From positions 1-51,170 of the forward strand of contig JAXLNO010004732.1 of NCBI GenBank assembly GCA_038087875.1: a stretch of DNA of 51,170 nt, read 5' to 3'. A program made the position numbers and the translations under genes. Each line of letters opens with the position of its first letter. The stretch's first letter is position 1. This document shows positions 4,782-51,170 of the stretch, in pieces. Under the pieces are notes generated by a model. That model was not told the DNA's origin, did not search any database, and worked only from the letters and a program-made list of their open reading frames with translations. The stretch is from Malacoraja senta (lineage: Eukaryota).

Positions 4782-5117
4782 ATACAAAGCCTTACCCTGG
4801 ATACAATACAAAGCCTTACCCTGGATACAATACAAAGCCTTACCCTGGATACAATACAAAGCCTTACCCTGGATAGAATACAAAGCCTTACCCGGGATAC
4901 AATACAAAGCCTTACCCTGGATACAATACAAAGCCTTACCCTGGATACAATACAAAGCCTTACCCGGGATACAATACAAAGCCTTACCCTGGATACAATA
5001 CAAAGCCTTACCCTGGATACAATACAAAGCCTTACCCTGGATACAATACAAAGCCTTACCCTGGATACAATACAAAGCCTTACCCTGGGTACAATACAAT
5101 GCCTTACCCTGGGTACA
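4773..5117. repeat. 24-bp minisatellite, ~14.4 copies (CTGGATACAATACAAAGCCTTACC)
   Basis: Direct tandem copies without spacers; translates as (CIQGKALY)n on the minus strand. Confidence 0.97.
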
Positions 5118-20341: not shown

Positions 20342-23300
20342 TTATGTTGTATGAAAGTGTTCAATAAATTTTCCCCAAGTCTTATCAAATTTAACCAAGG
20401 GTTCAACAATATCACTTCTGATTTTTTCTAAATTTAAACATGATATCGTTTCAGAATACCACTGGAGTGTGGTCGGAGGGTTGGAATATTTCCATTTAAA
20501 TAAAATAAATCTTCTGGCAATTAATGTGGTAAAAGCAATCAACCGATGGGCGGAGTGGGACAAATGAATAGAATCTAACATTGGTAACCCAAAAATTGCA
20601 GTAATAGGATGAGGTTGTAAATCTATACCTAAGACTACCGAAATAGTATCAAAAATTTATTTCCAATATTTTTCCAAAAGAGGGCAGGACCAAAACATAT
20701 GGGTCAGTGATGCCACTTCAGAGTTACATCTGTCACAGGTAGGATTTATATGACCATAAAAACGAGCTAACTTATCTTTTGACATATGAGCTCTGTGGAC
20801 CACCTTGAATTGTATCAAAGCGTGTCTTGCACACATTGAAGAAGTATTAACTAATTGAAGGATCCTCTCCCATTTCTCTATAGATAAAGACATTTGGAGT
20901 TCTCTTTCCCAGTCATTCTTAATTTTATCAAATGTATCTATTTGTAATTTTAAAATCAACTCATGAATAGTCGTTATTAATCCTTTCTGATAAGGGTTCA
21001 CTGTAAAAAAAATCCAAAATTTCGGGTTGATGTGGTAGCGGAAAAAGGGGTAGTTCCTTTTGTCTAATTTGTAAATATCTAAAAAAGTGTGAATTAGGTA
21101 AGTTATTGGAGAGTTGTTCGAAAGACATAAAACAACACTCCAAAAACAAATCACAAAAAGCTACTAATCCCTTCCTCTTCCATAACAAAAAAACTTGATC
21201 AGTACTAGATGGTTGGAAGAGATATTTGGATAAAATCAGATAGCCCAAAAAACTTATGAAATTGAAACCGTATTCGGAACGTATGTCTTATTATTGGGTT
21301 CGTCATATATTTATTCAATCTCGTAATTGTAAAAGGTAACGAGGTCCCTAGAATAGAAGCCAATTATAGCCCTTGTAAGGAATCACGTTCTAGGTTTATC
21401 CGTCCAGGGCATTGGGTATCTTCTAAATCTTTTGTCCAAAATGTTAAATAACGATCATTGACTGCCCAATAGTAGAGTCTAAGGTTCGGCAATGCCAAAC
21501 CACCAACTTTTTTTTATTTCTGCAGGTATTTTTTACCTAGTCTGGCATTTTTATTCTGCCATATATATGAAGATATTTTAGAGTCTATAATATCAAAGAA
21601 AGATTTGGCAATAAAAATTGGTATCGTCTGAAATAAATACAGAAATTTAGGTAAAATGAACATTTTAATAGCATTGATTCGGCCAATTAAGGATAAGGAC
21701 ATTGGTGACCATTTAGTGAACTGATGTTTAATATGGTCAATTAAAGGAATAAAATTAGCTTTAAATAAATCCTTGTGTTTCTTGGTGATCTTAATACCTA
21801 AATAAGTAAAACTTTCGGTAGTCAATCTAAATGGAAACTGTCCATAACTCGAAACAAAATTATATAATGGGAAAGCTCACTCTTACTAAGATTTAGTTTA
21901 TAACCAGAAAAACTACTGAATTGATTAAGTAATGCTACTATTGCCGGAATAGATTTCTCAGGGTTAGAAATAAATAATAACAGATCATCTGCATAAAGAG
22001 ATAGCTTATGTGTCTTATTCCCGCGGACAATACCAAAAATATTAGGGGATTCCCTAATAGCAGTGGCTAAAGTTTCCAAAGCAATATCAAATAGTAAAGG
22101 ACTTAAGGGACAGCCCTGTATAGTACCTCGAAAGAGCCTGAAAAAAGGGGATCTCTGATTATTAGTAAATACAGAAGCCTGAGGTATAAGATATATCAGT
22201 TTGATCCAAGAGATAAATTTTGGACCAATCTTAACTTTTTCAAGTATATTGAATAAGTATTCCATTCTACTCTATCAATAGCCTTCTCGGCATCAAGTGA
22301 GATGACACTTTCTGGGATTTTATTAGACGCTGTATATACAATATTTATTAATCTCCTAACATTAAAGAATGAGTAATGATTTTTAATAAAACCTGTCTGA
22401 TCTTCAGAGATAATTTGCGGTAAAATCTTTTCCAATCTCATAGCTAATATTTTGGAAAGAATTTTAAAATTTACATTGAACATTGATATAGGTCTATATG
22501 ATGTCACTTCAGTAGGGTCTTTATCTTTTTTAAAAATTAAAGAAATAGAAGCTTCATAAAAAGATTGTAGTAATCTATTCCTTAAAAAGGCTTCTTTAAA
22601 TACCTTGCATAGCCATAGAGACAATAAATTTGAGAAATACTTTTAAAATTCTACTGTAAACCCATCTAAACCGGGAGCTTTACCAGAATTCATTGAAAAA
22701 ATTGCATTCTGTATTTCCTCTTCCGTGATGGGTTCATCTAACAACAGAGACTCAGGAACATCTGGCCTCCGTAGAGGCAATAGCGGAGGCCTCAATAGGC
22801 CTGACTGGGGGAGATCTGGGGATGGGGACTGGACATTGTGCCTTCTGGTAACCATTGTGGGGGGATGATTTTTGTATGTAGTGTCTATTTTTAGTCTGTG
22901 TCCAAGATCGCGGTCGGAAGGGAGAGTGGACGCTGGCACGGTTTAGCTGCCGCTGCTCTCTCTTCACATTGTGTTTCTGATTTTTGTTTTTTTTGTTGTG
23001 TCTTTGGATCGAATTCTGTCTTTAATTTGTGTGTTGGTGAGGTCTTTATAATTTATTTTACTCCGATTATATGTTTCTTATTTGTTAAACTCTGTAAGGT
23101 GTCCTTGAGACTTTGGTATAAGGCGCCCGTAAATAAAAGTTATTATTATTATTATTATTATTGTATGGTAAATTTGGTAAGTTCAGTTTCTTTAAAAACT
23201 CATGCATTATATTGGAATCAGTAGGAAAATTTGATTGGTATAGGGAGGTATAAAATTCCTGAAAGGATTTATTAATTTCGTCATGGTCTACAGTTACTGT

Positions 23301-25094: not shown

Positions 25095-26069
25095 TCTTCA
25101 GACGCAGCTGGAGGCGTCTTGAGGACTGTTAAAAAATCGAAAGTTACCATTGAAAAGCCGAATACGCAATCTAGTTGGAAATAATAGAGCTGGGCGCAGT
25201 TTTTTCTAATACAAATCAGACATTACATTATAAAAAGTCTTTCTTATTTCCAAAAGCTCGTAACTATAATCAGGGACAAACCGAAACTTACATCCTTCAT
25301 ATTCAACCACACCAAACTTTTTTGCTGCCTGGAGAATATTCTCCTTCATTTGAAAAAAATGAAACCGAATGATCAAGTGTCTCGGTTTATTACCGGATCT
25401 CTTCCCAATCCTATGTGCCTTATCCAGGAACGGAAGGTTTTCATTGTGCTCAATGTTGAATGTTTCCTTTATCATTTTAGAAGCATATTTTATAACATTA
25501 TCTCCTTCTTGGCCTTCCGGCAAACCAACAATTCGTAAATTCAAACGATGGCTTCTGTTTTCTAAGTCCATATTTTTAGACTTGTATTGCTGAAGTGCTC
25601 GAGTGTTTTCATTCATTCTCCGTTCCAATTTTTCAATCTTCAAATCTCTCTCCTGTCCCAGGGTGCACAAGATATCAATTTGATCCTTTTGTTCACAAAG
25701 TTCATCTTGTAACAAAGACAGTTTTCCTTGGACTTCCTTCAATTTGGTCGAAACTCCTTTCACCATTTCTTCCAAACTGCCAAATCTTGTTTTCATTTCA
25801 TTTTTCAGCTCATTTTTCAATTCATCGTTCATTTTCGATATTGCTTCTATGATGCTGGAATCAGAAGCTGCAGCTGTGGTTGTGGCTTTCCCCAGTTCCT
25901 TCTTTGGGGATCCTCCTTTCCTTCTTGTCTCCATGCTTTTCACGATTAAGGCGTGTAAAAGTGCAACCTTACAGCATGCTGCCTTACACAAGGAGAGTCT
26001 AGTTATTGACATGTTATTGATGTTCATGATTATTCTGTTCTTTGTGCCTGGCCATTTTGACTTTGTCAC
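25095..26069 (-). pseudogene. L1 ORF1 (frameshifted near the C-terminus)
   Basis: LENRSHRLNLRIVGLPEG...AHRIG...PRHLIIRF...FRFVPDYS; continues after a frameshift as FPTRLRIRLFNG. Confidence 0.9.
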
Positions 26070-29643: not shown

Positions 29644-30639
29644 TTATAATGGGGGATTTAATACTGTATCCAGCACAGCATTACCAAACCCTCTGAGATC
29701 TTTAATCTCCTTGTGGTAATACTTGTGAAACATCTGTTCACTTGCCCATCCTGCGGCCATGAGAATAAGGTCTATTAGCACGTCTGAATCCCTGGCCGCT
29801 GATGTTGATGCCGCCCTGGTGGAATGAGATTTAAATTTATCAGTATCAATACCTGAATATCTCAACACCTGTTTCAACCATCGTGAAATTGTTTGTGTTG
29901 ACACTTTCTTATGAGGCTTTTTATGACTAATAAAAAATGCCAATTCGGCGCCTCTTAAAACTTTTGTTGTTTCTATGTAACATTTCACATATGTTACTAC
30001 ACACAGTCGTGAATCTGTAGGATATGCTAAAAATTCCAACTTGCATCCTGTGAACCCAGGTCTACTTTGCTTCAGTAAATCATAGACATAGAATGTCACG
30101 GCATTTTGCCCTACTTTCATTCTATCAATTCTGAGTTTCTGTAATGTGTGAACTCTCTGTGCTGAAACTAATGCCATGAGCATAACCAATTTCATGGTAA
30201 TTTTGGATAATGACAGAGTTTCAACTGGATTCCAATTCCTTAGGAACATCAGTACATCTTTTACATTCCAAATTTCTGTATACCTGGGTCTGGGAGGATT
30301 AGAGTTGAAAATTTCTTTCATAAACCTACAGACCCAAGGATGTGCTCCAATTGGAGTTTGTTCTGATTCACTGCTTAAATATGCAGAGAGTGCACTTCGT
30401 GCAGTATTAATTGCACTATAACTTAATTTCAATTCATAGTGTAGAGTTGAAAGAAACTCTATTACATCTGAAATTTCTGCTGTGTTATATGCAATATTCT
30501 TTCCTGAACAAAACACCTCCCATTTCTTTATATATGAAATGTACTGCTTCTGGGTACTATTCCTCCAGGCTGCTGTCATAACATCCACCGTACGGTCTGA
30601 TAATCTTTTTCCAAGATATGGCCTTCTTAGAATCTGCAA
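29644..30639 (-). CDS. DIRS tyrosine recombinase (open frame, 331 aa)
   Basis: N-terminal WRNSTQKQY; catalytic R (SAQRVHTL), HSTR, GW and Y (FHKYY). The track start is TTG; the first ATG is internal (DVMTAAW). Confidence 0.9.
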   Translation of the reverse strand: MQILRRPYLGKRLSDRTVDVMTAAWRNSTQKQYISYIKKWEVFCSGKNIAYNTAEISDVIEFLSTLHYELKLSYSAINTARSALSAYLSSESEQTPIGAHPWVCRFMKEIFNSNPPRPRYTEIWNVKDVLMFLRNWNPVETLSLSKITMKLVMLMALVSAQRVHTLQKLRIDRMKVGQNAVTFYVYDLLKQSRPGFTGCKLEFLAYPTDSRLCVVTYVKCYIETTKVLRGAELAFFISHKKPHKKVSTQTISRWLKQVLRYSGIDTDKFKSHSTRAASTSAARDSDVLIDLILMAAGWASEQMFHKYYHKEIKDLRGFGNAVLDTVLNPPL

Positions 30640-34137: not shown

Positions 34138-37100
34138 AATTGTTATTTAGACCCAATCCTGGACAGACTCTCAACAAAACCGGCTCCTACCATAGCCTCA
34201 GTGCAAACTTTAAATGATTTAACTAAGACTAGGAATATGGTTGACATTTGGCGACTGCAGCATCCTACTAACAGAGATTTCTCTTTCTATTCTCATGTCC
34301 ACAAATCTTACACTAGGATTGACTATTTTTTGATTTCGTCTGAATTACTGTCCAGTATAACAAATTCCACCTATCATAATATTTTGATTTCTGACCATAG
34401 TCCGGTGTAACTTCAATTTAAATATATTCTGTCCAAACAAAAGTACAGCTGGTGCTTCAACCCTCTTCTTCTTAATGATCACTCTTTTATTGACCAAATG
34501 ACTGCATGTATAGATGAGTTTCTTACCATAAATGATAATGGGGAAGTCTCTGATTCCACTTTATGGGAGGCTTTTAAGGTTGTGATGAGAGGCCATATCA
34601 TTTCATTTGAATCATATACAAAAAGAGAACTTAATCGTCGCCTTAGGGATATTGATAAGATGCTTCCAGTGCTTGAAGAGACGTATAGATCCTCTCTTAC
34701 AGTCTGACTACAATAAGATCTTAAAACTAAAATATGAATATAATACTATCCTCAATAAACGTCTTAGCAGCCAATTACTAAAGCTCAAACAGAAATACTT
34801 TGAACTCGGTGATAAACCAGAGAAATTATTAGCAAGTCAACTTAGAGGTGAGCAAGCTAATCGTGCCATTCATAGGATTAAATTAAAATCAGGTATACTG
34901 GTTACTGACTTGAAGCATATAAATGCTTGCTTCAGGGACTTTTATAAAGAACTTTATTCCAGTAAAGTAAAGCCCACTGAAACAGATTTTTGTGATTTTT
35001 TCACTAACCTAAATATTCCACAACTTGATGGAGCATCTAGAGATGATATTGACACTCAGATTTCTGTAGATGACCTTCTGGAAGCTATCTGAGCATTTCC
35101 CTCTGGAAAAGCAGCAGGCCCAGATGGCTTCGGCTGCGAATTCTATAAGGCGTTTCATGGAAAAATAGTCCCTCTCATGTTAAGAATGGTGAATGATTCA
35201 GTGAAAAACAAGAGGCTCCCTAGCTCACTCTATGAAGCTAATGTTTGCTTGCTCCTGAAAAAGGGAAAAGCAGAGACTGACCTTGCAAGTTACAGACCAA
35301 TCGCTCTTCTGAACTGTGACCAGAAGATGATAACTAAAGTCCTGGCCACAAAATTAGGTAAGCACATCTCAAAAATTGTACATCCTGATCAGACTGGATT
35401 TATACCGGGTAGATTCTCATTTAGTAATGTTCGTCTGCTGTTAAATACATTATATTCGGTTCATGACAAGGATACGCAAGCTGCCATCCTATCTCTCGAT
35501 GTTCAGAAGGCTTTCGATCAGATCGAATGGCCCTATATGCTAGAGACGTTAAAACAGTTTGGGTTCGGGATGAACTTTATAGAGTGGATTAAAATAATTT
35601 ATTCAAATCCAGTATCTTCTATTCTGACTAACACAGAAAAATCCCAACCTTTTGACCTGCAGCGCGGTGTGAGACAGGGTGATCCCCTTTCTCCCCTGCT
35701 GTTTGATATCGCTTTAGAACCTCTTGCAATAGGAATCAGGGGTCACCCGGGTATTCATGGTGTAAAATTTGGTAATGTTGAATGTCTTGTGAATTTATAT
35801 GCAGATGATTTATTAATTTGTTTATCTGATCCGGTAGTGTCAGTTCCCAACCTTCTGAACTACATTAAGTCATTTGGTAAACTGTCAGGATATACAATTA
35901 ACTGGGATAAAAGTGAATTCATGCCCTTGACGAATAATTTGAGCCCTGCTTTCTTGAAATCTTTGTCATTTAAATTAGTTACCACCCACTTTCCCTATGT
36001 TGGACTGAAGATTTCCAGAAACCCCAAACTTCTACTTAAATTGAATTTTTTGGACATGGTAGACAAATTAAAAGCTAGCAATAGGTGCTGGAAGCTGCTT
36101 CCCCTCTCAATGATAGGTCGCATCAATGCTATTAAAATGGTTGCACTTCCAAGATTTTTGTATCTTTTCCAAAACCTTCCTGGCTACTTACCTTTGTCTT
36201 TTTTCAAACAACTGGATTCGGTTATACTCTCATTTGTCTGGGCAGACAAATCCCCTCGCATTGCTAAAGCCCACCTACAGAAAAATGTGGACAGGGGTGG
36301 CCTCGGCCTTCCGGTACTGAAGCATTACTACTGGGCTGCAAATGCGAGGGCTCTCACTTTCTGGAAATGGGGTTTTCCTGATGATGACCGGTCTGATGTT
36401 TCCCCACTCTAGCTAAAAATTGAATCCATGTATGTTTCAGAGACCTCTCTCCCAGTGTTGCTCTTTTTCGGAGCACAGGTTCCCTACAAATTAGTTGGCC
36501 ATAACTTCATTCTCAGAAACTCCGTAAGGATTCTGAATCAAATAAAAACAAATTGGGGATTGGTAAATATCTCAGTGTATACCCCTATAGTACACACAAT
36601 CACTTGTTCAAACCGGCACTGATGGATAGAGTGTTTCTGGACTGGAGGGGGAAGGGGCTGTGTTGTATTGATGATCTCTACATAGATAATAAATTTGCCT
36701 CATTTTTTCAGCTCCAAACTAAATATCGCCTTCCTCAACAACACTTCTATCGCTACCTTCAAGTCGGGCAATTTGTACGGGAGCGTATCCCAGAATTCAT
36801 AGTCAAACCAAAAAGTCACATTCTTTATGATCTACTTCTCTCACAGCCTGACTCTAAACACTTGATCTCCCGCTTTGTCACTGCCTTTACGACACCAGTT
36901 GAAGCTGGTCATCTCAGGGAGGCCTGGGCTACAGAATTGGGCACTCCTGTGTCAAATGAACTGTGGGAGGAAGGTTTGTCCGGTATACAGAGTTGCTCTA
37001 TTAGTTCTAGATACAGATTAATTCAATTTAAAGTCTTGCATAGACTACATTATTCTAAAACCAAACTTAACAAGATTTTTGAATCGGTTTCCTCCATGTG

Positions 37101-37756
37101 TGACAGATGTGGTACTGCAGAAGGATCACTATCACATTTATTTTGGCACTGTCCAGTATTAAGTAATTTCTGGAGTGACATATTTAACTGTCTTTCCAAA
37201 CAATGTCGAATAAATATTCCGCCTGATTGTAATCTGGCTATTTTTGGTTGCTCTGACAATACAAGGGCCCTTCCTTCCCACCAGAAGCAGATTCTTAGAG
37301 CAGGTATGGTTGCAGCTAAAAAAATAATATTACTGAATTGGAAGTCCCCACTCTCCCCATGTTTTAAGAGGTGGCTCAACAAAATGCTTTCTATTGCTAA
37401 GATGGAACAGATTCGTTTTAACAAAGGAAATTTACAAAATTATTTTTTGAAGGTGTGGAAACCATTTTTGATTTTGCTTGAAGAGGCATAATTGTCTGAT
37501 CTGTTTATTTTGCTGTTGTGCTATGTCTTTAATCTGAGCGAACTTTGATCTTGCACTCTGATTGATATTCTGGCTGCCCCACACTTGTTTTTTTTTTGTT
37601 TCTTTAATTGGTGTTTTTTGTTTGCTGTCTACTGTGCGTTCGTTATGATTAAAAAAATGAAGCTGTACAATAATTGTATAATGGTAGATGCCGAGCGATT
37701 TATCCTTGTACAATTGCTTCCAATAAAAATAAATTAATAAAAAAAGGAGAAAAAAA
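34138..37756 (+). mobile_element. 5'-truncated L1 (ORF2 from mid-endonuclease to C-terminus, 3'UTR, poly(A))
   Basis: NCYLDPILDR, YTRIDYF, SDHSP, GPDGF, YRPIALLN, QTGFI, QGDPLSPLLF, YADDLL, CDRC...HLFWHC; AATAAA at ~37722 then an A-rich tail. Confidence 0.95.
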
Positions 37757-38942: not shown

Positions 38943-39118
38943 CAAAGATACTAGAGGAGCAAGATAGACGACTCCTCCGAAATCCAATGGACTGACGTGT
39001 AGTACGCAATGGAACGTCACGGCCGCCATTTTCTAATGCAAAACGCGACTTCCGGTTTGCCTCCCGCTGCTTTGATCCAAAGATTATATAGCGGAGCGGA
39101 GCGCCTCTAGTATCTTTG
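38943..39118. mobile_element. 176-bp P-family MITE (or MITE + terminal remnant)
   Basis: Perfect 15-bp TIR CAAAGATACTAGAGG...CCTCTAGTATCTTTG. The interior resembles the 5' end of the P transposase element at 50345. No clean TSD. Confidence 0.75.
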
Positions 39119-40934: not shown

Positions 40935-41290
40935 CACAATGTACATAAGACGGCAGTTATTTGACAAATACTCCGCAGTTCGGTGTAGATCATGTCCTGT
41001 CGACATCTGAAATTAAAGAAAATATCATGCAGTCAATATGTTCTTATTCTGCATTAAATAACAGAGAGGTATAAAGAAAATGCTCTTTAGGAGAATATTT
41101 TTAAAAGGATGTTGCCATGAGGACTCGACTATCTGAGATCAATGATCTAACTACAGTGAGAGATTGAACAGGCTAAATAAAAATTTCAATATGCCACAGA
41201 AGTAATAAATGTTTTCTTACCTTTCCTCCTTAATGGGGAACCTGAAGAAAGACAAGTCGGGTTGCCTACATTGCCGATTGTTTTTCTCAG
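40935..41290 (-). pseudogene. Second, decayed THAP/P-transposase copy (partial exon 1, 214-bp intron, partial exon 2)
   Basis: NRQCRQPDLSFFRFPIKEER|gtaag at 41221; acceptor tttcag|ATGTCGACAG at 41006; RTAEYLSNNCRL is homologous to the copy at 48664-50242. Confidence 0.8.
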
Positions 41291-41727: not shown

Positions 41728-44700
41728 TGTAGATGAGATATGCATGTGCCTTTAACATAGTGACCTCATACCTACTAACCACTCCCCATATCACAAGTAT
41801 ATCTACAACCTCCCCACCCACAGATCGCTCTCTAGTTCCTGTGACAGACCACGTACAGCTAGTGCAATGTGTAATGCTCCAGTATGAATAAAGATAGTAA
41901 AGTAACGATGCCTCGTTATGGATTCTTTACATGGTGTCGAATAACTTACCTTGCGCCTCCTGTTTATCGGTTTATCATTTAATTTTGTCCCAGTTTTTTG
42001 TTTCCCCCGCCCTCCTATTTCTTTGTCATGGCCTCTTCTGCCCGTAAGCCCGATGTGCTCGTTTTCGATTTAGACATCGCCCTTCGATGGGACGTATTCA
42101 AACGTGACTTTGAACACTATTTCACGATCGCTCATCCTGCCGCCACCGCCGATCTCAAAGCCTCTCTGCTTCTCAACTTGGCTGGTCCCGAGGCCCTGAC
42201 TCGCTCTGACTTCTTCGTCTACGCTGATGGCGAATCAGCTCGGGACCCGGTATGTCTGGTGGCTAAGTTTGATGCTATTTGTGATATTCCGACAAATTGC
42301 ATCTTAGAACGTTTTAAACTGTTCGCGCGGCGTCAGCTCCCTGGGGAATCTGCTGAGAACTATGTCATTGCGCTGCGGCACCTCGGCAGGCGCTGCCGCC
42401 TCCACGCGTGGAACCCCGATGAGATTCTCAGGGACCTACTGGTTTACGGTCTCCGTGATGAGAAGCTTAGGGCCGAACTTCTGCGCAAGCCGGATCTGAC
42501 TTTAACCGATGCTATGCACGCTACTCGCTTAGCTGAAGCTGTTTCCTCGGCGGCGTCGCCGGCTGAGCAGGCGATCAACTTTGCCAGCACTCCCAGTCAT
42601 CTCATGAACACACCCCAGTCGCGACCCCCGGGGTCGCTCGCTGCTCGAGGGGGACGCGCCCCGGGGTTCGGTGCTACAGGGGGAGGTACCCGGCAAAGGT
42701 GCCCTAATTGCAACTTCACGACTCATCAATACAATGTGTGCCCTGCCTTGGGTAAAACGTGTAATGTCTGCAAAAAATTGAACCATTTTGCTGCGGCTTG
42801 TCGTTCCCGTGGGAAGCCTGTCGCTGCTCGAAGGGGAAATTTAAACAACCTTCTACAAGCTGACAGTGCGCTCAGCTCCCAGTGTTATTTCGATGAACAG
42901 TCTGTTTCTGCATCTGACTCCTCTCAGGGGGAGACCAACTTGTTTACCGTGTTGGACGCACCTGCTATGATAACGGACCCTTCTGTGCTAGTCACTGTGA
43001 ACAACTCGACCTTCACTGCTAAGATTGACACGGGGGCTGTGGCCAACGTAGTGTCAACATCTCTTTTCAACCAGATAAGAACTAATGAGCAGATATTTTC
43101 CCAGAGCTCAACCTTGCATGCCTACGGTGGGGAGATTCTTACTCCTGTGGGCAAGGCCACGCTACGCTGTAAGATACTAGAGACCTCTCGGCCCCTCACC
43201 TTCTATCTCCTCGATCAAAAATGCATTCCCCTGTTGGGGATCCGGGCATGCCAGGAAATGGGACTGGTGTACTTCCACCGTGACATCCACCAGGTGCAGA
43301 CTCTTATGGACCCGCTGGCCGATTATCCCGACCGCTTTGATGATCAGCTAGGCAAACTACCCTGCAGCTACAAGATTGTAGTGGACCGTAAGATCGTTCC
43401 TGTGGTCCATGCTCCTCACCGTGTCTCCTTCGCCATGAGGGACAGAGTGGAGGCGACACTACACAGTATGGTACAAATGGGCATCCTAAAGGCGGTCGTC
43501 GAGCCCACCAGCTGGGTCTCTTCCATGGTTGTTGCTGCTAAAAAGGACATGAGTGAGATACGCATCTGCATCAACCCCAAAGACCTCAACCTGGCCATTA
43601 GACGCCCTCACTACCCTATGAGAACGGTGGAAGAACTCGCTGCACAGGTTGGTCCAGCAACGGTTTTTTCTGTCCTCGATGCCAAAAGCTCCTTCTGGCA
43701 GATACCACTGGACGAGCGGTCGTCCATTTTGACAACTTTCGCCACCCCCTACGGAAGGTTTCGGTTCCTCCGAATGCCATTCGGAATCAACTCTGCCAGC
43801 GAAGTATCTCAGCGGACAATGGAGCAGTTGTTTTTAGGTCTACCATGCGCCATAATTGTTGACGACATCCTCGTTTACGGTAAGGACGTTGCCGAACACG
43901 ATGTCAACCTCCGCCAGGTCCTGGACCGGGCCCGGCAAATCAACTTGAAACTGAACCCCAAGAAGTGCCGATTCCGCGTCCCGGAGGTCACCTATGTTGG
44001 ACATGTATTCACCGCTGAGGGGTTAAAGCCAGACCCGCAGAAAACGGCTGCCATTTCAGGGATGCCCCCTTCTACCAATGTGGCAGGCCTGCAACGCTTC
44101 CTCGGCTTGGTAAACTACCTGGGGAAGTTCATCCCCGACCTCAGCGAGCTCAGCGCTCCCCTGAGGGATCTGATAAAAAAGGACACGTCCTGGCTTTGGT
44201 TACCCAACCATCAGAAGGCATTCGACATTCTTAAGTCTAAGCTGATCAGCACCCCCACGCTCAAGTTCTTTGACCTGCAGCGTCCCATTGTCCTCACCTG
44301 CGACGCCTCTCAGTTCGGACTCGGTGCCGCCTGTCTCCAGGTCCATGACGGCCTGCAGCTGCCTGTCTCCTTCGCGTCCCGCACCATGACCGCCACCGAA
44401 CAGCACTACGCGCAGATCGAGAAGGGGCTACTGGCCGTGGTGTTTGCCTGCTCCAAATTCCGGGACTACATCGTGGGCAACACTTTCACTGTTGAAACTG
44501 ACCATCAGCCTCTTGTCACCATCCTCAACAAGTCGATCCATGTGGTCTCAACACGCCTGCAGCGCATGATGCTGCAGCTCCAGCGCTTCACGTTCACGGT
44601 GGTTTATCGTAAGGGCAAGGACATGTTCGTGGCCGACACGTTGTCTCGTGCCCCGCTGACGTCCACCGCTCGCCACCAATATGAAATGTCTGAGCTATTG

Positions 44701-45493
44701 GTGCTACAATTGAACATCGTCCCCTCACAGCAGATGAAGTCCCTGGTTGAACACACTACCAATGACCCTGCCCTGCAACAGCTGTCTGCCGTCATCCGGC
44801 AGGGCTGGCCTGACCGTCGTTCGGCACTGCCGGCTGGTGCCGTGCCCTACTTCCTGGTCCGTGACGAGCTCGTACTACACGACGGCGTGGTGGTGAAGGG
44901 TCACAAGGTGGTCGTGCCCGCGGCGCTGCACGACCACTATTTTCAAGTCGCTCACCGCGGTCATCCTGGGGCCGAAGCCACCGTGTCTCTCGCCAAGAGC
45001 CAGTTCTATTGGCCGGATATGGCCAAATACATCCGGGAGAGGGTCTCCTCGTGTTCCACCTGCAACAGCCTCGCCCCCCACCAGCAGCGTCAGCCGCTTC
45101 TGCAGCAGCCCGCGCCCGAACTGCCCTGGATGGCGCTTGCCGCCGACATTTTCGAGTGGCGGGGCAAACACTTCCTGGTTCTCGTTGACTCCTACTCCAG
45201 CTGGTTTGTGGTTGACCGGCTGCATTCCATAACCTCTTCGGCCGTCATCGATAGGTTGTACCCTCATTTTGGCACTTTTGGCCCCCCGGCAAGCCTGCAA
45301 TCGGACAATGGCAGCCAGTTCACGAGCTCATACCTACTAACCACTCCCCATATCACAAGTATAACTACAACCTCCCCACCCACAGATCGCTCTCTAGTTC
45401 CTGTGACAGACCACGTACAGCTAGTGCAATGTATAATGATCCAGTATGAATAAAGATAGTAAAGTAACGACGCCTCGTTATGGATTCTTTACA
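41728..45493 (+). mobile_element. Gypsy/Ty3 LTR retrotransposon with internal 3' deletion
   Basis: 5' LTR 41728-41931 (TG...CA); PBS-like TGGTGTCG at 41932; truncated 3' LTR 45327-45493; 5-bp TSD GCTAC (41723-41727 and 45494-45498). Confidence 0.96.
42028..45453 (+). CDS. Gypsy gag-pol polyprotein (single open frame; integrase truncated)
   Basis: CCHC knuckles; protease IDTGA; RT LDAKSSFWQI/MPFGI/VDDIL; RNase H CDAS..GLGA, TDHQPL; IN H..HPG/CSTC, ADIF, SDNG; then runs into LTR sequence. First ATG at 42028. Confidence 0.95.
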   Translation: MASSARKPDVLVFDLDIALRWDVFKRDFEHYFTIAHPAATADLKASLLLNLAGPEALTRSDFFVYADGESARDPVCLVAKFDAICDIPTNCILERFKLFARRQLPGESAENYVIALRHLGRRCRLHAWNPDEILRDLLVYGLRDEKLRAELLRKPDLTLTDAMHATRLAEAVSSAASPAEQAINFASTPSHLMNTPQSRPPGSLAARGGRAPGFGATGGGTRQRCPNCNFTTHQYNVCPALGKTCNVCKKLNHFAAACRSRGKPVAARRGNLNNLLQADSALSSQCYFDEQSVSASDSSQGETNLFTVLDAPAMITDPSVLVTVNNSTFTAKIDTGAVANVVSTSLFNQIRTNEQIFSQSSTLHAYGGEILTPVGKATLRCKILETSRPLTFYLLDQKCIPLLGIRACQEMGLVYFHRDIHQVQTLMDPLADYPDRFDDQLGKLPCSYKIVVDRKIVPVVHAPHRVSFAMRDRVEATLHSMVQMGILKAVVEPTSWVSSMVVAAKKDMSEIRICINPKDLNLAIRRPHYPMRTVEELAAQVGPATVFSVLDAKSSFWQIPLDERSSILTTFATPYGRFRFLRMPFGINSASEVSQRTMEQLFLGLPCAIIVDDILVYGKDVAEHDVNLRQVLDRARQINLKLNPKKCRFRVPEVTYVGHVFTAEGLKPDPQKTAAISGMPPSTNVAGLQRFLGLVNYLGKFIPDLSELSAPLRDLIKKDTSWLWLPNHQKAFDILKSKLISTPTLKFFDLQRPIVLTCDASQFGLGAACLQVHDGLQLPVSFASRTMTATEQHYAQIEKGLLAVVFACSKFRDYIVGNTFTVETDHQPLVTILNKSIHVVSTRLQRMMLQLQRFTFTVVYRKGKDMFVADTLSRAPLTSTARHQYEMSELLVLQLNIVPSQQMKSLVEHTTNDPALQQLSAVIRQGWPDRRSALPAGAVPYFLVRDELVLHDGVVVKGHKVVVPAALHDHYFQVAHRGHPGAEATVSLAKSQFYWPDMAKYIRERVSSCSTCNSLAPHQQRQPLLQQPAPELPWMALAADIFEWRGKHFLVLVDSYSSWFVVDRLHSITSSAVIDRLYPHFGTFGPPASLQSDNGSQFTSSYLLTTPHITSITTTSPPTDRSLVPVTDHVQLVQCIMIQYE

Positions 45494-45789
45494 GCTACTT
45501 CCCCACAGCCATCAGGCTATTAAACTTGGCTCGGACAAAACTCTGAACATTAATAGCCCATTATATGTTATGTGCACTTTATCAGTTTATTTATTCATGT
45601 GTGTATAAATTTATATAATTGTATATGGACACACTGATCTGTTTTGTAGTCAATGCCTACTATGTTCTGTTGTGCTGAAGCAAAGCAAGAATTTCATTGT
45701 ACAATCAGGAACACATGACAATAAACTCAATTGAACGAACTTGAACAATAGTATTACTTCAAATAAATAATGTCTGAAAATTATGCACT

Positions 45790-48236
45790 TTATTTATGTT
45801 CCACTTTTTGAAGTTTTTTACAACTCCTTTTAACAGTCATGTTATGCATTTTTCTATTCTTGAATTTGAGTCCATAGTGCATGTGGATACTCACAAAGAT
45901 TGCTACAATTCTAATCTTGACTCTATTGCAGCACAAGTTCATGTCTTTGTATTGCTGTGTGTTATGTATTGCTGTGTTTATTAGATGGGAAATGTTATCC
46001 CTGGTCATCTTAACATCATCAAATTCTGTGCGGAACACTTTCTCGCACACTTCACAGAACCCAAGAAAGTATTCCGAAGGCACCATCAATGAGCCAAAGT
46101 CAGACGTTGATGTGTTGTATGCTTTGTGATGGATGAATATAATAATAATAATAATAGATTTTATTTATATAGCGCTTTTCAGGACTCAAAGTCGCTTTAC
46201 AATTGAGAGTCAGGAATAAACAAAACAAAATAGAGCAGTAAGACAGAGGGGGGGGGGGGAACATGGGACTAAGGGTTTGCAGAGGTGAAGAGATGGGTCT
46301 TGAGGCGGGACTGGAAGATGGTGAGGGACTACTAAAGTGGCATCCGTTCGTAATAGAACTTCTCTGCATGTGTGGCATTTTGAGGACAGTTCATGTGAAG
46401 AGATGATTTTGTGACAGATGTGTCCTGCGATGTAAGCTAGTGTATTCTCTTCAGGGAGATCTAGTGAAATGCTGCAGACTGCATTGTGTTGTTTTGTTTT
46501 ATTGGTATGGGAGATAGATGGAGATGGTTTCTTGACTCTGTTTTTTGTTAGTGTTTGCAATGTTAAGATAAATCTGTCTGAGTCGGGGGAACAGTTTGCA
46601 CTCACAGATGGCTTTATCAGTTCAGCCACCATAACCATCCGGAAAGCACATCGAAACTCCTTCGCTGATGGATTTTCTCTGAATCCGCCCTTTCGCTGAA
46701 TAGTGGAGAACAAATTCTCTACAACATCCTGATTGATCCGAGATGTGAACATAAAACGGGCGTCTGTGCTTTCCTTTATGTGCTGCCACAGCTGTGAAAT
46801 GCAAGAAATTGCAAGCCGCCATCCCTTGACAAACAACACATTTTTAGCTCCAAGCACTGTCAAGCTTCGGAGTACAGTCAAGCATGATTCAAAGAATGAC
46901 TTATGCGCAGACTTTTCAGAAATAGGCCTCCTTAACATTTTGGGGTCCTTGAAAAACCTGCTGTTAAATGAGTCAAACAGTCCATCAACCATTTCAATGA
47001 ACTCTGCCGCATAAACAGCCTCCCCAGGTAACTTTCCAAGAGCTGCATAGGTGTAGACGCCTGCTGCTACCGAATGGCTAAGCACCTGCGCAGCCTTGTT
47101 GACTCTCATTTTAGAGAAGCTGTTTAAAACAAAATGGCCTCTGGTTAATTTATGGGCTTTTCTAATGGGCAACTGTGAATCATGATCATAAAATGTGTAA
47201 ATATTACCCCATTTGATATGTTTTTTTATGCCATCCTCTCCCTTGACATCAAAAACATATTTCTCCAAATTTGAGCGAGTGTTTTTCAACAAGTGGGGTG
47301 GGTCATGCATGCAATAGATATTGGTTCCCCCGTGGACGAAGAAAGGATGGTCTTCTGTCACACCCAAGTTGGAGTACAGGCGAATATTGCTTGGGCCTTG
47401 GTCACAAACAACGGCATTAGGCTGTAGTCCAATAGCCTTGACCTTCTGTAAACATTCATTGAGTAATGTTTGTAGTTTGTCAGCCGTTGTGCAGTCCCGT
47501 GAAAGAAAGTAACCTACAGGTTGCTTCCATTTCCCCATCAAGCCTCTAACCATGAAAACTAGGGCATGGTTGGCAGGCCTTGATGTCTTCCCTTGGGATC
47601 CAAAGTCCTCAAAACCTTCCACTGAATCTTCAGTAATATTGTAAGAGAGGCTTGCACGTAAACTCATTTCGTCAAAGGAGACTACACATAATGTATCCCT
47701 CTCTGACATCCCCGCAACCCTGTCTTTCAAAAGTTCAAAGATCTTAGGGGGAAACCCAGGCCTCACTTCAATATTGCTCAACCACCTACGTAGTGATGAG
47801 ATTGATGGAAGTGTGAAAATGCACTGGCAGAACTGATATGCTCGGGGACTCTGGTGGTAGAGGGACAAGGCAACCACCTTGTCTGAATAACTCCATCGTC
47901 TTCCTCTTGCACTTCTACGTCCAGCCGCATTACGCAACTGCGACGCAAAGAAAGACAGCGCTGGTTCTTGTAAAAATTCACCAGCCCCTCAGATCAAGTC
48001 ACTAATTGTCTTAATTTCTGTAGTATTCTTTTTCATTGATAATTTAATCTGTTGTACTCTTTTTTTGAGGGGGAAAGTACGCTGTCTTTCCTTCTTCAGA
48101 GCTCTGCTGTCATTCACATTTGGTGTGGATTGAAGATCAGGTTTTTCAGGAGTTGTAGAGACATTGCTGGGTTCTTTACGATGAATTTTGTCTGCAGCTG
48201 AGCAGTAAGAATGTTCGGCCAGTATGTTGTGTGACA
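45790..48236 (-). pseudogene. P transposase exon 3 (coiled coil + catalytic core + C-terminus)
   Basis: SPRAY, LPS..SL, FDEM, KWKQPVGYF, CDQG, HDPPHLLKN, MRVNKAAQVLS, NQDVVENLFS, GSLMVPS. One in-frame TGA at 47989-47991 and a ~200-bp insertion. Confidence 0.92.
46136..46328 (-). mobile_element. L2-like LINE 3' end with (TTA)n tail, inserted in the P transposase
   Basis: ccctcaccatcttccagtcccgcctcaagacccatctc...aataaaatctattattattatt; transposase frame resumes as FIHHKAY. Confidence 0.8.
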
Positions 48237-48663
48237 CTGCCAAGACCAAAAAAATGAGAAAGGGAAAAAGAAATGTCAAGCATACTAATGAAAAAGATGA
48301 AGCATATACATGTAAATAAATCAGCATCTACTAATAATTATAATTAAAAATAGATGTGATGCACCAATTTCAATCTACCAGAAGAAAAGTTAAATCAATT
48401 TAAATGTTGTATGAATTATGCTTGAGGAAGCTTTAAATGGATGTTCTTACTTTAATTAAATACTAGTACGCATTCCATCAGCCCACACTGTGTAGTCTTA
48501 CGTGTGATTATAGTTTTGTGAACATTTCACAAATGAAAATAAAAGTACCATACATGCCATTACATATTGACCATTGGCAATTATATCAGTTTGGATATAA
48601 CTTTTTAATATTTAGCCAAAATGAGAGAATATATTTTATTTTAAAAAGGAGAAAATTACTTGC

Positions 48664-48932
48664 CTCTTTGCTGTTTTAAAGGCGTTGGTGAGGATGGGAG
48701 GTTCTCATTCTTCCTCTTGAGTAACCTGCGTTGGGAAGACAGACGTTTTGGCGGGTTAGGAATGTCAAAGAGCGTTGGAACTGCATTCCAATTTAGCCTG
48801 TTCTTGGTCTGCTTGTTGGAAAACTGGTCAAGTTCAAAGTGTAAAGAACAAAGACAACAGTTGGCTGACAAGTACTCCGGAGTTCAGTTCAGGAGATCTT
48901 GTCGACGAGTATTCTGGACCCACTGTTGACAT
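48664..48932 (-). pseudogene. P transposase exon 2 (THAP C-terminal half)
   Basis: Acceptor tttcag|; RCQQWVQNTRRQDLLN*TPEYLSANCCLCSLHFE...RLNWNAVPTLF (C2CH and AVPTLF box); in-frame TGA; probable GC donor. Confidence 0.88.
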
Positions 48933-49631
48933 CTGAAATTACAGAACATATCATTTAGGATTAACTACATGCCTGCAGAATGGATGATGTATCACTTAAG
49001 TGCAATTGTTTTCAGTTGTGTGGAGAGACCTGTATATTGAAGATGCATTTTGCCTCTAATATGTCAATTTACCTTAAATGTAGAAGAGAATATTAAAAAC
49101 TTCTTACAAAGACCATTAAATATTTTCTTTCTATCCTCTTTTGGACCTAAGGCATAGCAGGGCTGCCAACTCTCACACAGAGGGAAGGGAGGGAGAGAGG
49201 GAAGGGAGGGAGGGAAAGAACGGAGAGGGAGAGAGGGAGGGAGATCGAGAGAAGAGAGGGGAGAGAGAGATCGAGAGAAGGGGGAGAGAGAGAGATCGAT
49301 TCTGACTCCGCGGTGTTTTCAATCCAGCGCTGCCCGCCCGCGGCGGGACGCCCTCACACCGCAGACCGCAGACCCTGTTGGTGGTCGGCGGTCACAGCAC
49401 TCCGGAGCGGCGACCCGGCAAGGCATCGCCCGCTCCGTGTTGGTGTCCCAGCGCTGAGAGAGAGAAGGAGAAAGAGAGAGAAAGGGGAAAGAGAGAGAAG
49501 GGGAGAGGGAGAAGGGGGTGAGGGAGAAGAGGGAGAGGGAGAAGGGGGAGAGGGAGAAGGGGAAGAGGGAGAAGGGGGAGAGGGAGAGTGGAACGATGGC
49601 ACGTTATAAGGCGCAGCCGTCCCATTCCGGC

Positions 49632-49667
49632 CAAAGATTATAGAGCAGAGCTCCTCTAGTATCTTTG
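49632..49667. mobile_element. 36-bp double-ended P-family remnant
   Basis: CAAAGATTATAGAGCAGAG-CTCCTCTAGTATCTTTG flanked by ATTCCGGC / ATTCCGAC (7/8 TSD). Confidence 0.85.
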
Positions 49668-49715
49668 ATTCCGACCGCCGCCGCCGCCGCCGAACCCCCC
49701 GCCCACCATTGCACC

Positions 49716-49752
49716 CAAAGATTATAGAGCGAGTGGAGTTTTATAATCTTTG
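49716..49752. mobile_element. 37-bp double-ended P-family remnant
   Basis: Perfect 11-bp TIR CAAAGATTATA...TATAATCTTTG flanked by a perfect 8-bp TSD ATTGCACC (49708-49715 and 49753-49760). Confidence 0.9.
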
Positions 49753-50133
49753 ATTGCACCCTTCTTCACGGCGGGCTTGTGATCTTTGCTTGTGGTGTCT
49801 CGACAATTCGAGGGACATAACGGGTAACAGCCGCTGCGTTCCCGGACTCGAATCTGAGCTCGAAAAATCTGGTGGTCACTGGGCCTAATGTGTCCATAAC
49901 ACGGGCCATATTTTGGAGACCCCTGCCTTACAAGAACAAAACCAAAAACGTACAGAAGTGTTACAATTATTGGCTTTATTATTGGTAAATAAAGATCTAT
50001 TAAAAATAATTCTAATAACTTTCTAATGTACCGACAAACCTAGTTTCCCAATGACCGTTGATGGGAGAACAGAAAATAACATTTTCAGTTCAGAATAAAA
50101 TCGACAGATGTCACATATAATATATTTTCTCAC

Positions 50134-50242
50134 CTTTCTTTTTTTCGGGGAACCTAAAGAATGACAGGTCGGGTCGTTTACATTGACGATTTGAGCAATT
50201 GATAGCAGAGCAGTGATATGAAGATTTAGATGTAGATGCCAT
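50134..50242 (-). pseudogene. P transposase exon 1 (THAP N-terminal half)
   Basis: MASTSKSSYHCSAINCSNRQCKRPDLSFFRFP; donor |gtgag. One nt short in the A7 run relative to the phase required and to the second copy. Confidence 0.88.
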
Positions 50243-50389
50243 GACTGTAGTCGAGGCACGCCGGTAAAATGGCGTCGACAACCACCCATGGCATACTACC
50301 CTTTCTTTGCTGAGTGGCGCATCTTGCTCTGCTATATAACCTTTGGTGAAGAGCAGGTAAGGATAAAAGCACTGCCATGCAGCGGGAGG

Positions 50390-50915
50390 CAGGAATGCAG
50401 CCAGTGATGCCATGCATTCCCTTTAATGCAGCCAGTGATGCATGCATTCCCTTTAATGCAGCCAGTGATGCATGCATTCCCTTTAATGCAGCCAGTGATG
50501 CATGCATTCCCTTTAATGCAGCCAGTGATGCATGCATTCCCTTTGATACAGCCAATGATGCATGCCTTCTCCTTAATGCAGCCAGTGACGCATGCATTCC
50601 CTTTAATGTAGCCAGTGATGCATGCATTGCCTTTAATGCAGCCAGTGACGCATGCATTCCCTTTAATGCAGCCAGTGACGCATTCATTCCCTTTAATGCC
50701 GCCAGTGACGCATGCATTCCCTTTAATGCAGCCAGTGGCGCATGCATTCCCTTTAATGCAGCCAGTGATAAATGCATTCCCTTTAATGCAGCCAGTGATG
50801 CCACGCATTCCCTTTAATGCAGCCAGGAATGCATGCATTCCATTTAATGCAGCCAATGATGCATGCATTCCCTTTAATGCAACCAGTGATGCATGCATGC
50901 CCTTTAATGCAGCAG
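50390..50915. repeat. 30-bp minisatellite, ~17-18 copies (ATGCAGCCAGTGATGCATGCATTCCCTTTA)
   Basis: Direct tandem copies; source of the repetitive ORFs in the track; lies inside the repeat homologous to 6085-6360. Confidence 0.97.
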
Positions 50916-51170
50916 GGGGAACATGCACAGGTGCTTGCAGGCCGATCCCCGCATTTTATAATTCACACTATATTCACACTTAATATAGCCCTTCAGGCAG
51001 ATTTCTGTCTTATTTCCAAACCATTTCCCCAAACTCACGAAGCCGACCTTGCGTGACAACGGTGTGGATGTGGGGAGTCCAGACCGCCCAAAACAGGCCC
51101 TTCGGCCCATTCCCCCCCCCTGCCAGCCCGCAGTTGGTATTGTGTGAATCAGGTCTACGTTCGCCCAAAT

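What the first reader, a model, noticed from the sequence alone, without database searches (positions are those of the whole stretch)
49624..49760. 36-37-bp double-ended elements with 8-bp TSDs: candidate vertebrate P-element excision footprints
Seen: two tiny elements, each consisting only of two CAAAGAT-type termini, flanked by 8-bp direct repeats (ATTGCACC perfect; ATTCCGGC/ATTCCGAC 7/8). In the first, the right end read inward matches the first 18 nt of the 38943 MITE exactly (CAAAGATACTAGAGGAGC). Its left 19 nt match the P transposon terminus at 50345 at 17/19. A third, 41-bp version lies at 39078-39118. Established: Drosophila P transposase makes 17-nt staggered cuts, so end-joining leaves roughly 15-18 nt of each terminus between the 8-bp TSDs. 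Inference: these are germline excision scars, implying this vertebrate P family used the same unusual cut geometry in vivo. They seem too short to have been mobilised as units.
Basis: partly seen in the sequence, partly recalled or inferred. Interest (0 to 1): 0.78.

Follow-up and report, generated by a model that had tools for sequence, protein, structure and literature searches.

The report
Skate P-element excision scars
Two 36-37-base leftovers, each made only of the two tips of a P-element-type jumping gene between intact 8-base target duplications, sit inside a dead copy of that same transposon in a skate genome. They are most likely the scars left when such elements cut themselves out with the long staggered cut known from fruit-fly P elements.

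Summary
E1 (49632-49667, 36 bp, flanking repeats 7/8) and E2 (49716-49752, 37 bp, 8/8) are the only clean TSD-flanked double-ended mini-elements in the window.

That gene is on the minus strand, has a split THAP domain, a DDE core and a GTP-binding insert, and matches Drosophila P transposase 6P5A at E=3e-42. Its 5' tip at 50345 matches E1's left arm 18/20.

All three tiny elements fit 18 nt + n + 18 nt, with n = 0, 1 and 5. The 5 is a tandem copy of the adjoining arm end. Similarity to the full-length ends stops abruptly at nt 18-20. Experimental Drosophila P scars look the same, as 17 + insert + 17.

The third element (39078-39118) has no duplication of its own. It is the right end of a 176-bp MITE, so it is not an independent scar.

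I could not run a genome census or an empty-site comparison, so a mobile micro-MITE and in-situ deletion remain possible. This scan had already noted similar scars elsewhere in this genome. This window adds the parent transposase in cis. It is a new member of a known kind and of moderate interest.

The parts
49624..49631 (.). Left copy of the 8-bp target-site duplication of E1 (ATTCCGGC)
49632..49667 (+). E1, a 36-bp tip-only remnant. It is an 18-nt A-type left arm plus an 18-nt B-type right arm with no filler. It can also be read as 20+18 with a 2-nt GC overlap.
49668..49675 (.). Right copy of the E1 duplication (ATTCCGAC, 7/8 match)
49708..49715 (.). Left copy of the 8-bp target-site duplication of E2 (ATTGCACC)
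49716..49752 (+). E2, a 37-bp tip-only remnant: 18-nt A-type left arm, then T, then an 18-nt right arm of a third end type (CAAAGATTATAAAACTCC read inward). It has an 11-bp perfect TIR.
49753..49760 (.). Right copy of the E2 duplication (ATTGCACC, 8/8 match)
49776..49796 (.). Possible third, heavily trimmed scar: CTTTG between CTTGTGAT and CTTGTGGT (7/8), 36 bp from E2. Weak evidence.
   Evidence: The loose scan has a chance level of 3.4 hits per window.
49200..50199 (.). CpG-island-like block that holds E1 and E2 (CpG observed/expected 0.77-1.25, against 0.49 for the window)
50326..50345 (-). 5' terminus of the P-type transposon (CAAAGGTTATATAGCAGAGC on the minus strand). Similarity to the 38943 element begins exactly at this C.
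50134..50242 (-). Transposase exon 1: ATG and the N-terminal half of the THAP domain
   Evidence: PF05485 positions 1-27, E=0.006
48933..50133 (-). Intron 1 (about 1.2 kb), which splits the THAP domain and contains E1, E2 and GA-rich simple repeats
   Evidence: A paralogous fragment at 40997-41279 has an intron of only about 180 bp.
48659..48932 (-). Transposase exon 2: the C-terminal half of the THAP domain, with one in-frame stop at 48884-48886
   Evidence: PF05485 positions 50-87, E=3.8e-6
46324..47985 (-). Main transposase exon: RNase H-like core with the GTP-binding insertion domain. The FDEM, CDQG and NQDVVE motifs align to the catalytic D, D and E of Drosophila P transposase.
46132..46323 (-). 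SINE-like insertion of about 190 bp with an (AAT)n tail that interrupts the transposase reading frame
45793..46131 (-). C-terminal coding part of the transposase (THAP9_C-like by homology to P0002/P0004)
38943..39118 (+). 176-bp nonautonomous element with a 15-bp perfect TIR of B type. Its left 135 bp or so are homologous to the P 5' region.
39078..39118 (+). E3, a 41-bp double-ended module at the right end of that element: 18 + GCGGA + 18, where GCGGA is a tandem copy of the arm's last 5 nt. It has no TSD of its own.

Best explanation
E1 and E2 are germline excision scars of nonautonomous or autonomous members of a skate P-superfamily transposon family.

Proposed sequence of events:
1. An element with CAAAGAT-type ends inserted into the CpG-island-like part of intron 1 of a resident P copy and duplicated 8 bp.
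2. P-type transposase later cut the transferred strand at the element/TSD boundary and the other strand about 18-20 nt inside each end. The chromosome kept two 3' overhangs made of the element's tips.
3. End joining fused the overhangs directly or through a 2-nt GC microhomology (E1), or with one extra base (E2). This left 36-37 bp between intact duplications.
4. The remnants have no room for internal transposase-binding sites, so they are immobile and decay neutrally.

E3 has the same 18 + 5 + 18 build. I read it as an older scar about 135 bp inside a P 5' end whose inverted arm was later used, together with that 5' end, as the two ends of a new 176-bp MITE. This last step is inference only.

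What is shown: the anatomy, the TSDs, the arm boundaries and the P-type nature of the parent. What is inferred: the insertion-excision history, the cut position and the repair route.
For: 1. The anatomy is far beyond chance.
2. The TSDs match 8/8 and 7/8.
3. E1's arm identity to full-length ends in the same window is 18/20 (left, P terminus at 50345) and 18/18 (right, 38943 end). It then drops to 0/5 and 0/7. E3 shows the same boundaries, at 18/20 and 17/18.
4. The three elements differ in length only at the exact centre (0, 1 and 5 nt). The 5-nt filler is a tandem copy of the adjoining arm end, which is the templated-insertion signature of alternative end joining (PMC2895639).
5. The three junctions are all different, so these are not copies of one master.
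6. The parent is P-type. THAP is split over exons 1 and 2. PF21787, PF21788 and PF21789 are hit. The match to 6P5A is E=2.7e-42 with the catalytic motifs aligned. It is the only cut-and-paste transposase in the window.
7. The Drosophila P enzyme cuts 17 nt inside the end (PMC7776569). Sequenced Drosophila scars read TSD + up to 17 nt + microhomology or insert + up to 17 nt + TSD (PMC2895639).
8. The site is CpG-island-like. This agrees with the P-element preference for promoter and open-chromatin regions (PMC7776569).
9. Known P elements and P-MITEs need about 100 bp or more per end to move (PMC1562414).
Against: - No empty or filled allele, related species or second haplotype could be examined.
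- No genome-wide length distribution could be made. There are only two clean cases, or three with E3.
- The arms are 18-20 nt, longer than the 17-nt Drosophila maximum. Either the cut differs or a few bases were copied before joining.
- No full-length element with an A-type and a B-type end, or with E2's right end, is present. The 3' end of the autonomous copy was not found.
- E1 and E3 are 33/36 identical outside the 5-bp indel, which is also what descent from one mobile 36-bp unit would give.
- The two TSDs resemble each other (ATTCCGGC vs ATTGCACC, 5/8, both beginning ATT). This is unexplained.
- Two events 84 bp apart require a hotspot.
Confidence: 0.6

Rival explanations
1. Micro-MITEs: the 36-41-bp double-ended units are themselves mobile. 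The transposase pairs the two closely spaced inverted tips and moves the unit, making a fresh 8-bp duplication at each landing site.
For: - TSDs are intact around E1 and E2.
- E1 and E3 share both end types and are 33/36 identical apart from a 5-bp central indel.
- E3 is a native part of a larger MITE end, so such a module exists ready-made.
- An earlier unchecked scan note reports two identical 22-bp hairpins, each with its own duplication, elsewhere in this genome.
Against: - The three junctions differ and E2 has a different right arm, so there is no single master.
- E3 has no TSD.
- Thirty-six base pairs leave no room for subterminal THAP sites.
- Known P elements need about 138 bp and 216 bp of end sequence, and P-MITEs keep somewhat under 100 bp per end (PMC1562414).
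- From general knowledge, a 36-bp duplex is too stiff to bring both tips into one synaptic complex.
Confidence: 0.12
2. In-situ shrinkage that says nothing about the cut position. A longer inserted copy lost its interior either by incomplete gap repair (short synthesis from a sister copy, then end joining) or by transposase-independent slippage or hairpin-stimulated deletion between its inverted ends. The remnants would be real relics, but their arm lengths would not report the cleavage geometry.
For: - In Drosophila most repair products come from incomplete synthesis followed by end joining (PMC2895639).
- The arms of 18-20 nt slightly exceed the 17-nt overhang.
- A 2-nt GC microhomology lies at the E1 junction.
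- A 176-bp relative exists in the window.
Against: All six arms end within nt 16-20. E1 and E3 share the same boundary with a sharp loss of similarity beyond it. Random breakpoints would scatter. No intermediate sizes between 41 and 176 bp occur in the window, though the sample is tiny and the tiny ones are the conspicuous ones.
Confidence: 0.17
3. One event, later duplicated. E1 and E2, with their flanks, arose from a local tandem duplication of a single TSD-remnant-TSD unit followed by divergence.
For: The four flanking octamers are alike (ATTCCGGC, ATTCCGAC, ATTGCACC, ATTGCACC). The left arms are identical for 15 nt, and the units lie 84 bp apart.
Against: The right arms belong to different end types and the central parts are only about 50% alike, while each unit's own flanking pair is 7/8 or 8/8. 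A duplication old enough to scramble the right arm would also have scrambled the TSDs.
Confidence: 0.05
4. Scars or relics of a different superfamily with 8-bp duplications (for example hAT), which merely lie next to a P transposase gene.
For: CAAAG also fits the generic hAT tip pattern and hAT makes 8-bp duplications (general knowledge, not tested).
Against: - The matching terminus sits 103 bp upstream of the THAP start codon, in the correct orientation.
- Similarity with the 38943 element starts exactly at that terminus.
- No other cut-and-paste transposase is in the window.
- From general knowledge, hAT excision goes through hairpins on the flanks and does not leave 18-nt tips.
Confidence: 0.03

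Closest known systems
End-joining scars of Drosophila melanogaster P elements (17-nt staggered cut; Beall and Rio 1997, as reviewed in PMC7776569; junction tables in PMC2895639)
   Same: Both 8-bp duplications are kept. Only the two element tips lie between them. Arms run up to the full overhang length. Junctions show 0-3-nt microhomology or short templated insertions. Insertion favours promoter-like, open DNA.
   Different: - The arms here are 18-20 nt, not 17 or fewer.
- The ends are unrelated in sequence (CAAAGAT... versus CATGATG...).
- The TIR is short (7-15 bp versus 31 bp).
- The host is a cartilaginous fish.
- These are old fixed germline relics read from a genome, not recovered from an excision assay.
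Zebrafish Pdre2 / zfTHAP9 (bioRxiv 10.1101/2024.03.22.586318) and human THAP9
   Same: A vertebrate P-superfamily transposase with a THAP domain, short TIRs (13 bp in Pdre2) and 8-bp TSDs. Excision activity has been shown experimentally for zfTHAP9.
   Different: In the zebrafish excision assays the donor sites mostly showed larger flanking deletions, and the paper does not map the cut position. Here the natural scars keep both tips and so hint at the cut position. The skate gene has introns splitting the THAP domain, and this copy is dead.
P-derived MITEs (Anopheles gambiae P-MITEs, PMC1562414; BuT5 in Drosophila, PMC3698922)
   Same: The 176-bp element 38943-39118 is a short nonautonomous relative sharing its ends and 5' subterminal sequence with a P transposase-bearing element.
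   Different: E1 and E2 are 5-30 times shorter than any described P-MITE and have no subterminal sequence at all. The 176-bp element's right end is a double-ended scar-like module, not a normal 3' end.
Excision footprints of Tc1/mariner, hAT, PIF and piggyBac elements
   Same: They are remnants at a vacated donor site, flanked by the target duplication.
   Different: From general knowledge, those superfamilies leave 0-5 nt of the element or palindromic flank nucleotides. None is known to leave 16-20 nt of each tip.

Membership tests
P superfamily transposon (parent element) | N-terminal THAP zinc-finger DNA-binding domain | tested here: met
   PF05485 is hit by exon 1 (profile positions 1-27, E=0.006) and by exon 2 (positions 50-87, E=3.8e-6). 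The domain is split by intron 1.
P superfamily transposon (parent element) | RNase H-like DDE core interrupted by a GTP-binding insertion domain | tested here: met
   PF21787 (2e-39), PF21788 (2e-13) and PF21789 (5e-8) are hit. The match to 6P5A P transposase is E=2.7e-42, with FDEM, CDQG and NQDVVE aligned to the Drosophila catalytic motifs.
P superfamily transposon (parent element) | 7-8-bp target-site duplication and short TIRs | tested here: inconclusive
   E1 and E2 have 8-bp TSDs at 7/8 and 8/8. The autonomous copy's 3' end was not found, so its TSD and TIR cannot be read. The 176-bp element has a 15-bp TIR but only 5/7 (2/8) flanking identity.
P-type excision scar | Both copies of the target duplication retained, with only terminal element sequence between them | tested here: met
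   for E1 and E2. Not met for E3, whose flanks match 4/8.
P-type excision scar | Each arm no longer than the staggered-cut overhang (17 nt in Drosophila), joined with microhomology or a short insertion | tested here: inconclusive
   The arms fit 18 + n + 18 with n = 0, 1, 5. Similarity to full-length ends stops at nt 18-20. This is 1-3 nt longer than the Drosophila limit. The cut position of this family is unknown.
P-type excision scar | Arms identical or near-identical to the ends of longer family members | tested here: met
   E1's left arm is 18/20 to the P terminus and its right arm is 18/18 to the 38943 end. For E2 only the left arm has a longer relative in the window.
P-type excision scar | Filled, empty or scar alleles at the same site, or experimental excision | not testable with these tools
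   No other haplotype, species or genome copy could be fetched. Related contigs L001, L002 and L006 lack the region. The metagenome scan gave only chance hits.
MITE / micro-MITE | Many near-identical copies at independent sites descending from one master | tested here: not met
   Within the window the three units have three different junctions and two different right-arm types. The genome-wide test was not possible.
MITE / micro-MITE | Enough terminal and subterminal sequence for transposase binding and synapsis | not testable with these tools
   This rests on published requirements only: 138 bp and 216 bp for the Drosophila P element, and under 100 bp per end in Anopheles P-MITEs (PMC1562414). 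No binding sites are known for this family.

The most novel reading that the evidence does not exclude
The long staggered cut is an ancestral property of the P superfamily, retained in a vertebrate lineage at about 18-20 nt. It can be read directly from fixed germline scars without any biochemistry. Such scars are also not inert: an inverted arm of a scar lying inside a P 5' region can pair with that 5' end and give birth to a new MITE. The 176-bp element 38943-39118 would be an example. In this window the pairs 49632-50345 and 49716-50345 have the same potential geometry.
Probability: 0.3. Interest if true: 0.65.

Novelty: new member of a known kind. Interest (0 to 1): 0.5.

Why it matters
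The 17-nt staggered cut is the oddest feature of P transposition and has been mapped only for the Drosophila enzyme. The papers I read on zebrafish and human THAP9 show excision but no cut map. If these remnants are scars, a skate genome carries a natural record of where a vertebrate P transposase cut. It would show that such elements not only inserted but were excised in the germline, and that they favoured CpG-island-like DNA, including their own 5' regions.

This window adds something the scan's earlier notes on similar scars in this genome lacked: the scars and a transposase-bearing parent with the same tip lie side by side. A genome-wide census would turn this into a quantitative map of cut position per P family. 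It would also test whether scars seed new MITEs.

Tried and rejected
- **3' end of the autonomous copy.** The coding sequence runs to 45793. The CAAAGAT at 45894 is inside coding sequence. The CAAAG at 45681 shares only 5 nt with the family ends and has no matching TSD. Treating 38943 as the 3' end gives a TSD of 3/8. The 3' end was not found.
- **Other copies for an empty-site test.**
  - The closest proteins (79-72% identity) come from contigs that are too short or have no DNA available.
  - L001, L002 and L006 carry no family termini and no alignable intron 1.
  - A protein search with the ORF spanning the 5' tip found nothing.
- **Metagenome scan with the 20-nt A-type tip.** It gave 3 hits, all single chance matches in unrelated DNA.
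- **E1 and E2 as the ends of one 121-bp element.** The outer flanks match only 5/8, while each unit has its own 7/8 or 8/8 pair. Rejected.
- **tRNA and Rfam search of the intron.** Nothing found.
- **Other DNA transposases in the window.** None; only retroelement and tyrosine-recombinase ORFs.
- **Loose scan for trimmed scars.** It gave two weak candidates at about chance level. They are reported only in passing.

Full report
**What is there**

E1 (49632-49667, 36 bp) lies between ATTCCGGC and ATTCCGAC. E2 (49716-49752, 37 bp) lies between two copies of ATTGCACC. A 41-bp relative, E3, lies at 39078-39118.

The double-ended pattern CAAAGRT-N(15-45)-AYCTTTG occurs three times, against 0.06 expected. 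I also scanned the window for any 12-70-bp piece with 6-nt inverted tips and 8-bp flanking repeats allowing one mismatch. Outside TA/CA low-complexity DNA it found only E1, E2 and one unrelated 50-bp hit. Shuffled windows averaged 0.33 hits.

E1's right arm equals the first 18 nt of the element starting at 38943. Its left arm matches the terminus at 50345 at 18/20.

Earlier notes of this scan identify the genome as a skate. The ORF at 46210-47937 on the minus strand hits the three P-transposase core families, including the GTP-binding insertion domain. It matches the solved Drosophila P transposase 6P5A at E=2.7e-42, with the FDEM, CDQG and NQDVVE motifs aligned to the fly catalytic residues.

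Close relatives (79-72% identity) exist in public assemblies, and a 62% relative is annotated in a teleost. Comparison with them shows two things:
- The coding sequence continues to 45793.
- A SINE-like insertion of about 190 bp at 46132-46323 interrupts it.

Upstream on the minus strand the THAP domain is split over two exons:
- Exon 1 is 50242-50134 (PF05485 positions 1-27).
- Exon 2 runs from 48932 (positions 50-87) and carries one in-frame stop.

The terminus at 50345 lies 103 bp upstream of the start codon. Similarity between this 5' region and the left 135 bp or so of the 38943 element begins exactly at the C of CAAAG. That places the element boundary there.

E1 and E2 therefore sit inside intron 1 of the transposon's own gene, 600-700 bp from its 5' end. 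This intron is about 1.2 kb, whereas a paralogous fragment at 40997-41279 has one of about 180 bp. The part holding E1 and E2 is CpG-island-like, with CpG observed/expected of 0.77-1.25 against 0.49 for the window.

No other cut-and-paste transposase is encoded in the window. This copy is dead: it has the SINE-like insertion, the stop codon and an apparent frame mismatch between exons 1 and 2. Its 3' end could not be found.

**Anatomy of the remnants**

Cutting each element into its first 18 nt, its last 18 nt and a middle gives this:

| Element | Left arm | Middle | Right arm |
|---|---|---|---|
| E1 | 18 nt | none | 18 nt |
| E2 | 18 nt | T | 18 nt |
| E3 | 18 nt | GCGGA | 18 nt |

The GCGGA in E3 is a tandem copy of the last five bases of its own left arm.

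Two full-length references are available in the window: the P 5' end (A type) and the 38943 end (B type).
- E1's left arm is 18/20 identical to the A-type end, then 0/5.
- E1's right arm is 18/18 identical to the B-type end, then 0/7.
- E3 gives 18/20 then 0/5 on the left, and 17/18 then 0/7 on the right.

Both reference ends read ...GAGC followed by AAGAT at this point. Because GC is self-complementary, E1 can equally be read as 20 + 18 with a 2-nt overlap.

So the arms end at nt 18-20 in every case, length differences are confined to the exact centre, and the three junctions all differ. E2's right arm is a third end type with no longer relative in the window.

**Comparison with the known mechanism**

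Drosophila P transposase cuts the transferred strand at the element boundary and the other strand 17 nt inside. This leaves 17-nt 3' overhangs of element sequence on the donor chromosome (PMC7776569). Sequenced repair products read TSD, up to 17 nt, a microhomology or a short and often templated insertion, up to 17 nt, TSD (PMC2895639). E1, E2 and E3 have this anatomy with 18-20 in place of 17.

P elements also favour promoters and replication-origin regions (PMC7776569). That fits the CpG-rich landing site and two events 84 bp apart.

Drosophila P needs about 138 bp and 216 bp of end sequence to move, and Anopheles P-MITEs keep somewhat under 100 bp per end (PMC1562414). From general knowledge, no other eukaryotic superfamily is known to leave 16-20 nt of each tip.

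For vertebrates, zebrafish THAP9 excises Pdre2, but the paper does not map the cut, and its donor sites mostly carried larger deletions.

**Best explanation and its limits**

I read E1 and E2 as germline scars of P-family elements that inserted into the resident copy's CpG-rich intron and were later excised. The two overhangs were then joined with little or no processing. My confidence is about 0.6.

The steps from anatomy to history are inferred. I could not obtain another copy, haplotype or species for an empty-site test. A metagenome scan gave only chance hits.

The rivals are:
- A mobile micro-MITE (0.12). E1 and E3 are 33/36 identical outside the central indel.
- In-situ shrinkage by incomplete gap repair or slippage (0.17). 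The remnants would still be relics but would say nothing about the cut position.
- A local duplication of one event (0.05).
- Another superfamily (0.03).

The arms exceed the fly maximum by 1-3 nt, so 'the same geometry' is not shown, only a similar one. The likeness of the two TSDs (both begin ATT, 5/8) is unexplained.

**The third element**

E3 is not an independent scar. Its flanks match 4/8, and it is the right end of a 176-bp element with a 15-bp perfect B-type TIR.

The left 135 bp of that element are a homologue of the P 5' region. One reading is that a scar formed about 135 bp inside a P 5' end, and that its inverted arm was later paired with that 5' end to create a new MITE. This explains the missing right-hand TSD and the double-ended right end.

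The same geometry exists at 49632-50345 and 49716-50345. This is an idea, not a result. It predicts that all copies of the 176-bp element share the E3 junction.

**Relation to earlier notes of this scan**

Unchecked notes report tip-only remnants of 12-46, 22, 23, 31, 34 and 36 bp with 8-bp duplications at other places in this genome. Several are near promoters and some occur in pairs. The notes also report further CAAAGAT micro-insertions. Follow-ups there said the parent element or its transposase type could not be shown.

I could not verify those notes. They agree with the present reading, and the kind of thing was therefore already found by the scan on other DNA. This window adds scars and a P-transposase-bearing parent with the same tip in one place, plus the 18-20-nt arm boundary measured against full-length ends.

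**Verdict**

This is a new member of a known kind: P-type excision scars, here in a cartilaginous fish. Interest is moderate (0.5). It would rise if a census confirms a sharp arm-length mode and scar-seeded MITEs.

Noticed in passing
window 50351-50982: About 21 tandem copies of a 30-bp unit (GCAGCCAGTGATGCATGCATTCCCTTTAAT-like) start 6 bp outside the P 5' terminus. The transposon abuts or landed in a minisatellite.
   Followed up: no
window 40997-41279: Fragment of a second, more diverged P-like 5' region on the minus strand. It holds a THAP exon 1 homologue and the exon 2 boundary, with an intron of only about 180 bp. It lies inside or next to the Gypsy-like element.
   Followed up: partly
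window 46132-46323: SINE-like insertion with an (AAT)n tail and a G12 run that interrupts the transposase ORF. A 29-nt piece recurs at 23130-23158.
   Followed up: partly
window 49160-49310 and 49455-49600: Two GA-rich (GGGAGA-type) simple-repeat blocks flank a very GC-rich, CpG-rich core in intron 1. The CpG-rich core might be captured host promoter-like DNA, as other notes of this scan report for transposons in this genome. This was not tested.
   Followed up: no
window 49776-49796: CTTTG between CTTGTGAT and CTTGTGGT (7/8), 36 bp downstream of E2. It may be a third scar trimmed to 5 nt. Locally unlikely by chance, but found post hoc.
   Followed up: partly
window 685-716: AAAAGATATATCTTTG (8+8, palindromic except for the first base) between AAATGTAC and AAAAGTAC (7/8), in AT-rich DNA. 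It may be a 16-bp scar of the same family. Weak evidence.
   Followed up: partly
window 13094-13143: 50-bp piece with 6-nt inverted tips (TAATTT...AAATTA) between ATGACCAT and ATGACAAT (7/8). It is unrelated to the CAAAGAT family and is at chance level.
   Followed up: no
window 41998-45453, with 41762-41931 and 45324-45493: Gypsy-type pol ORF (RT, RNase H, integrase). A 170-bp direct repeat (97%) lies upstream of the ORF and again over its 3' end. This is an odd arrangement for LTRs and suggests a rearranged or tandem copy.
   Followed up: no
window 29644-30639, 25206-26069, 2926-3828, 35177-37491: Other mobile-element ORFs are present: a tyrosine recombinase (Crypton/DIRS-like), an L1-type ORF1, an AP-endonuclease, and reverse transcriptases with a zf-RVT domain. 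The window is almost entirely transposon-derived.
   Followed up: no
window 4785-5093: About 13 tandem copies of a 24-bp unit (CAAAGCCTTACCCTGGATACAATA), picked up by the loose scar scan. It is a minisatellite and is unrelated to the finding.
   Followed up: no
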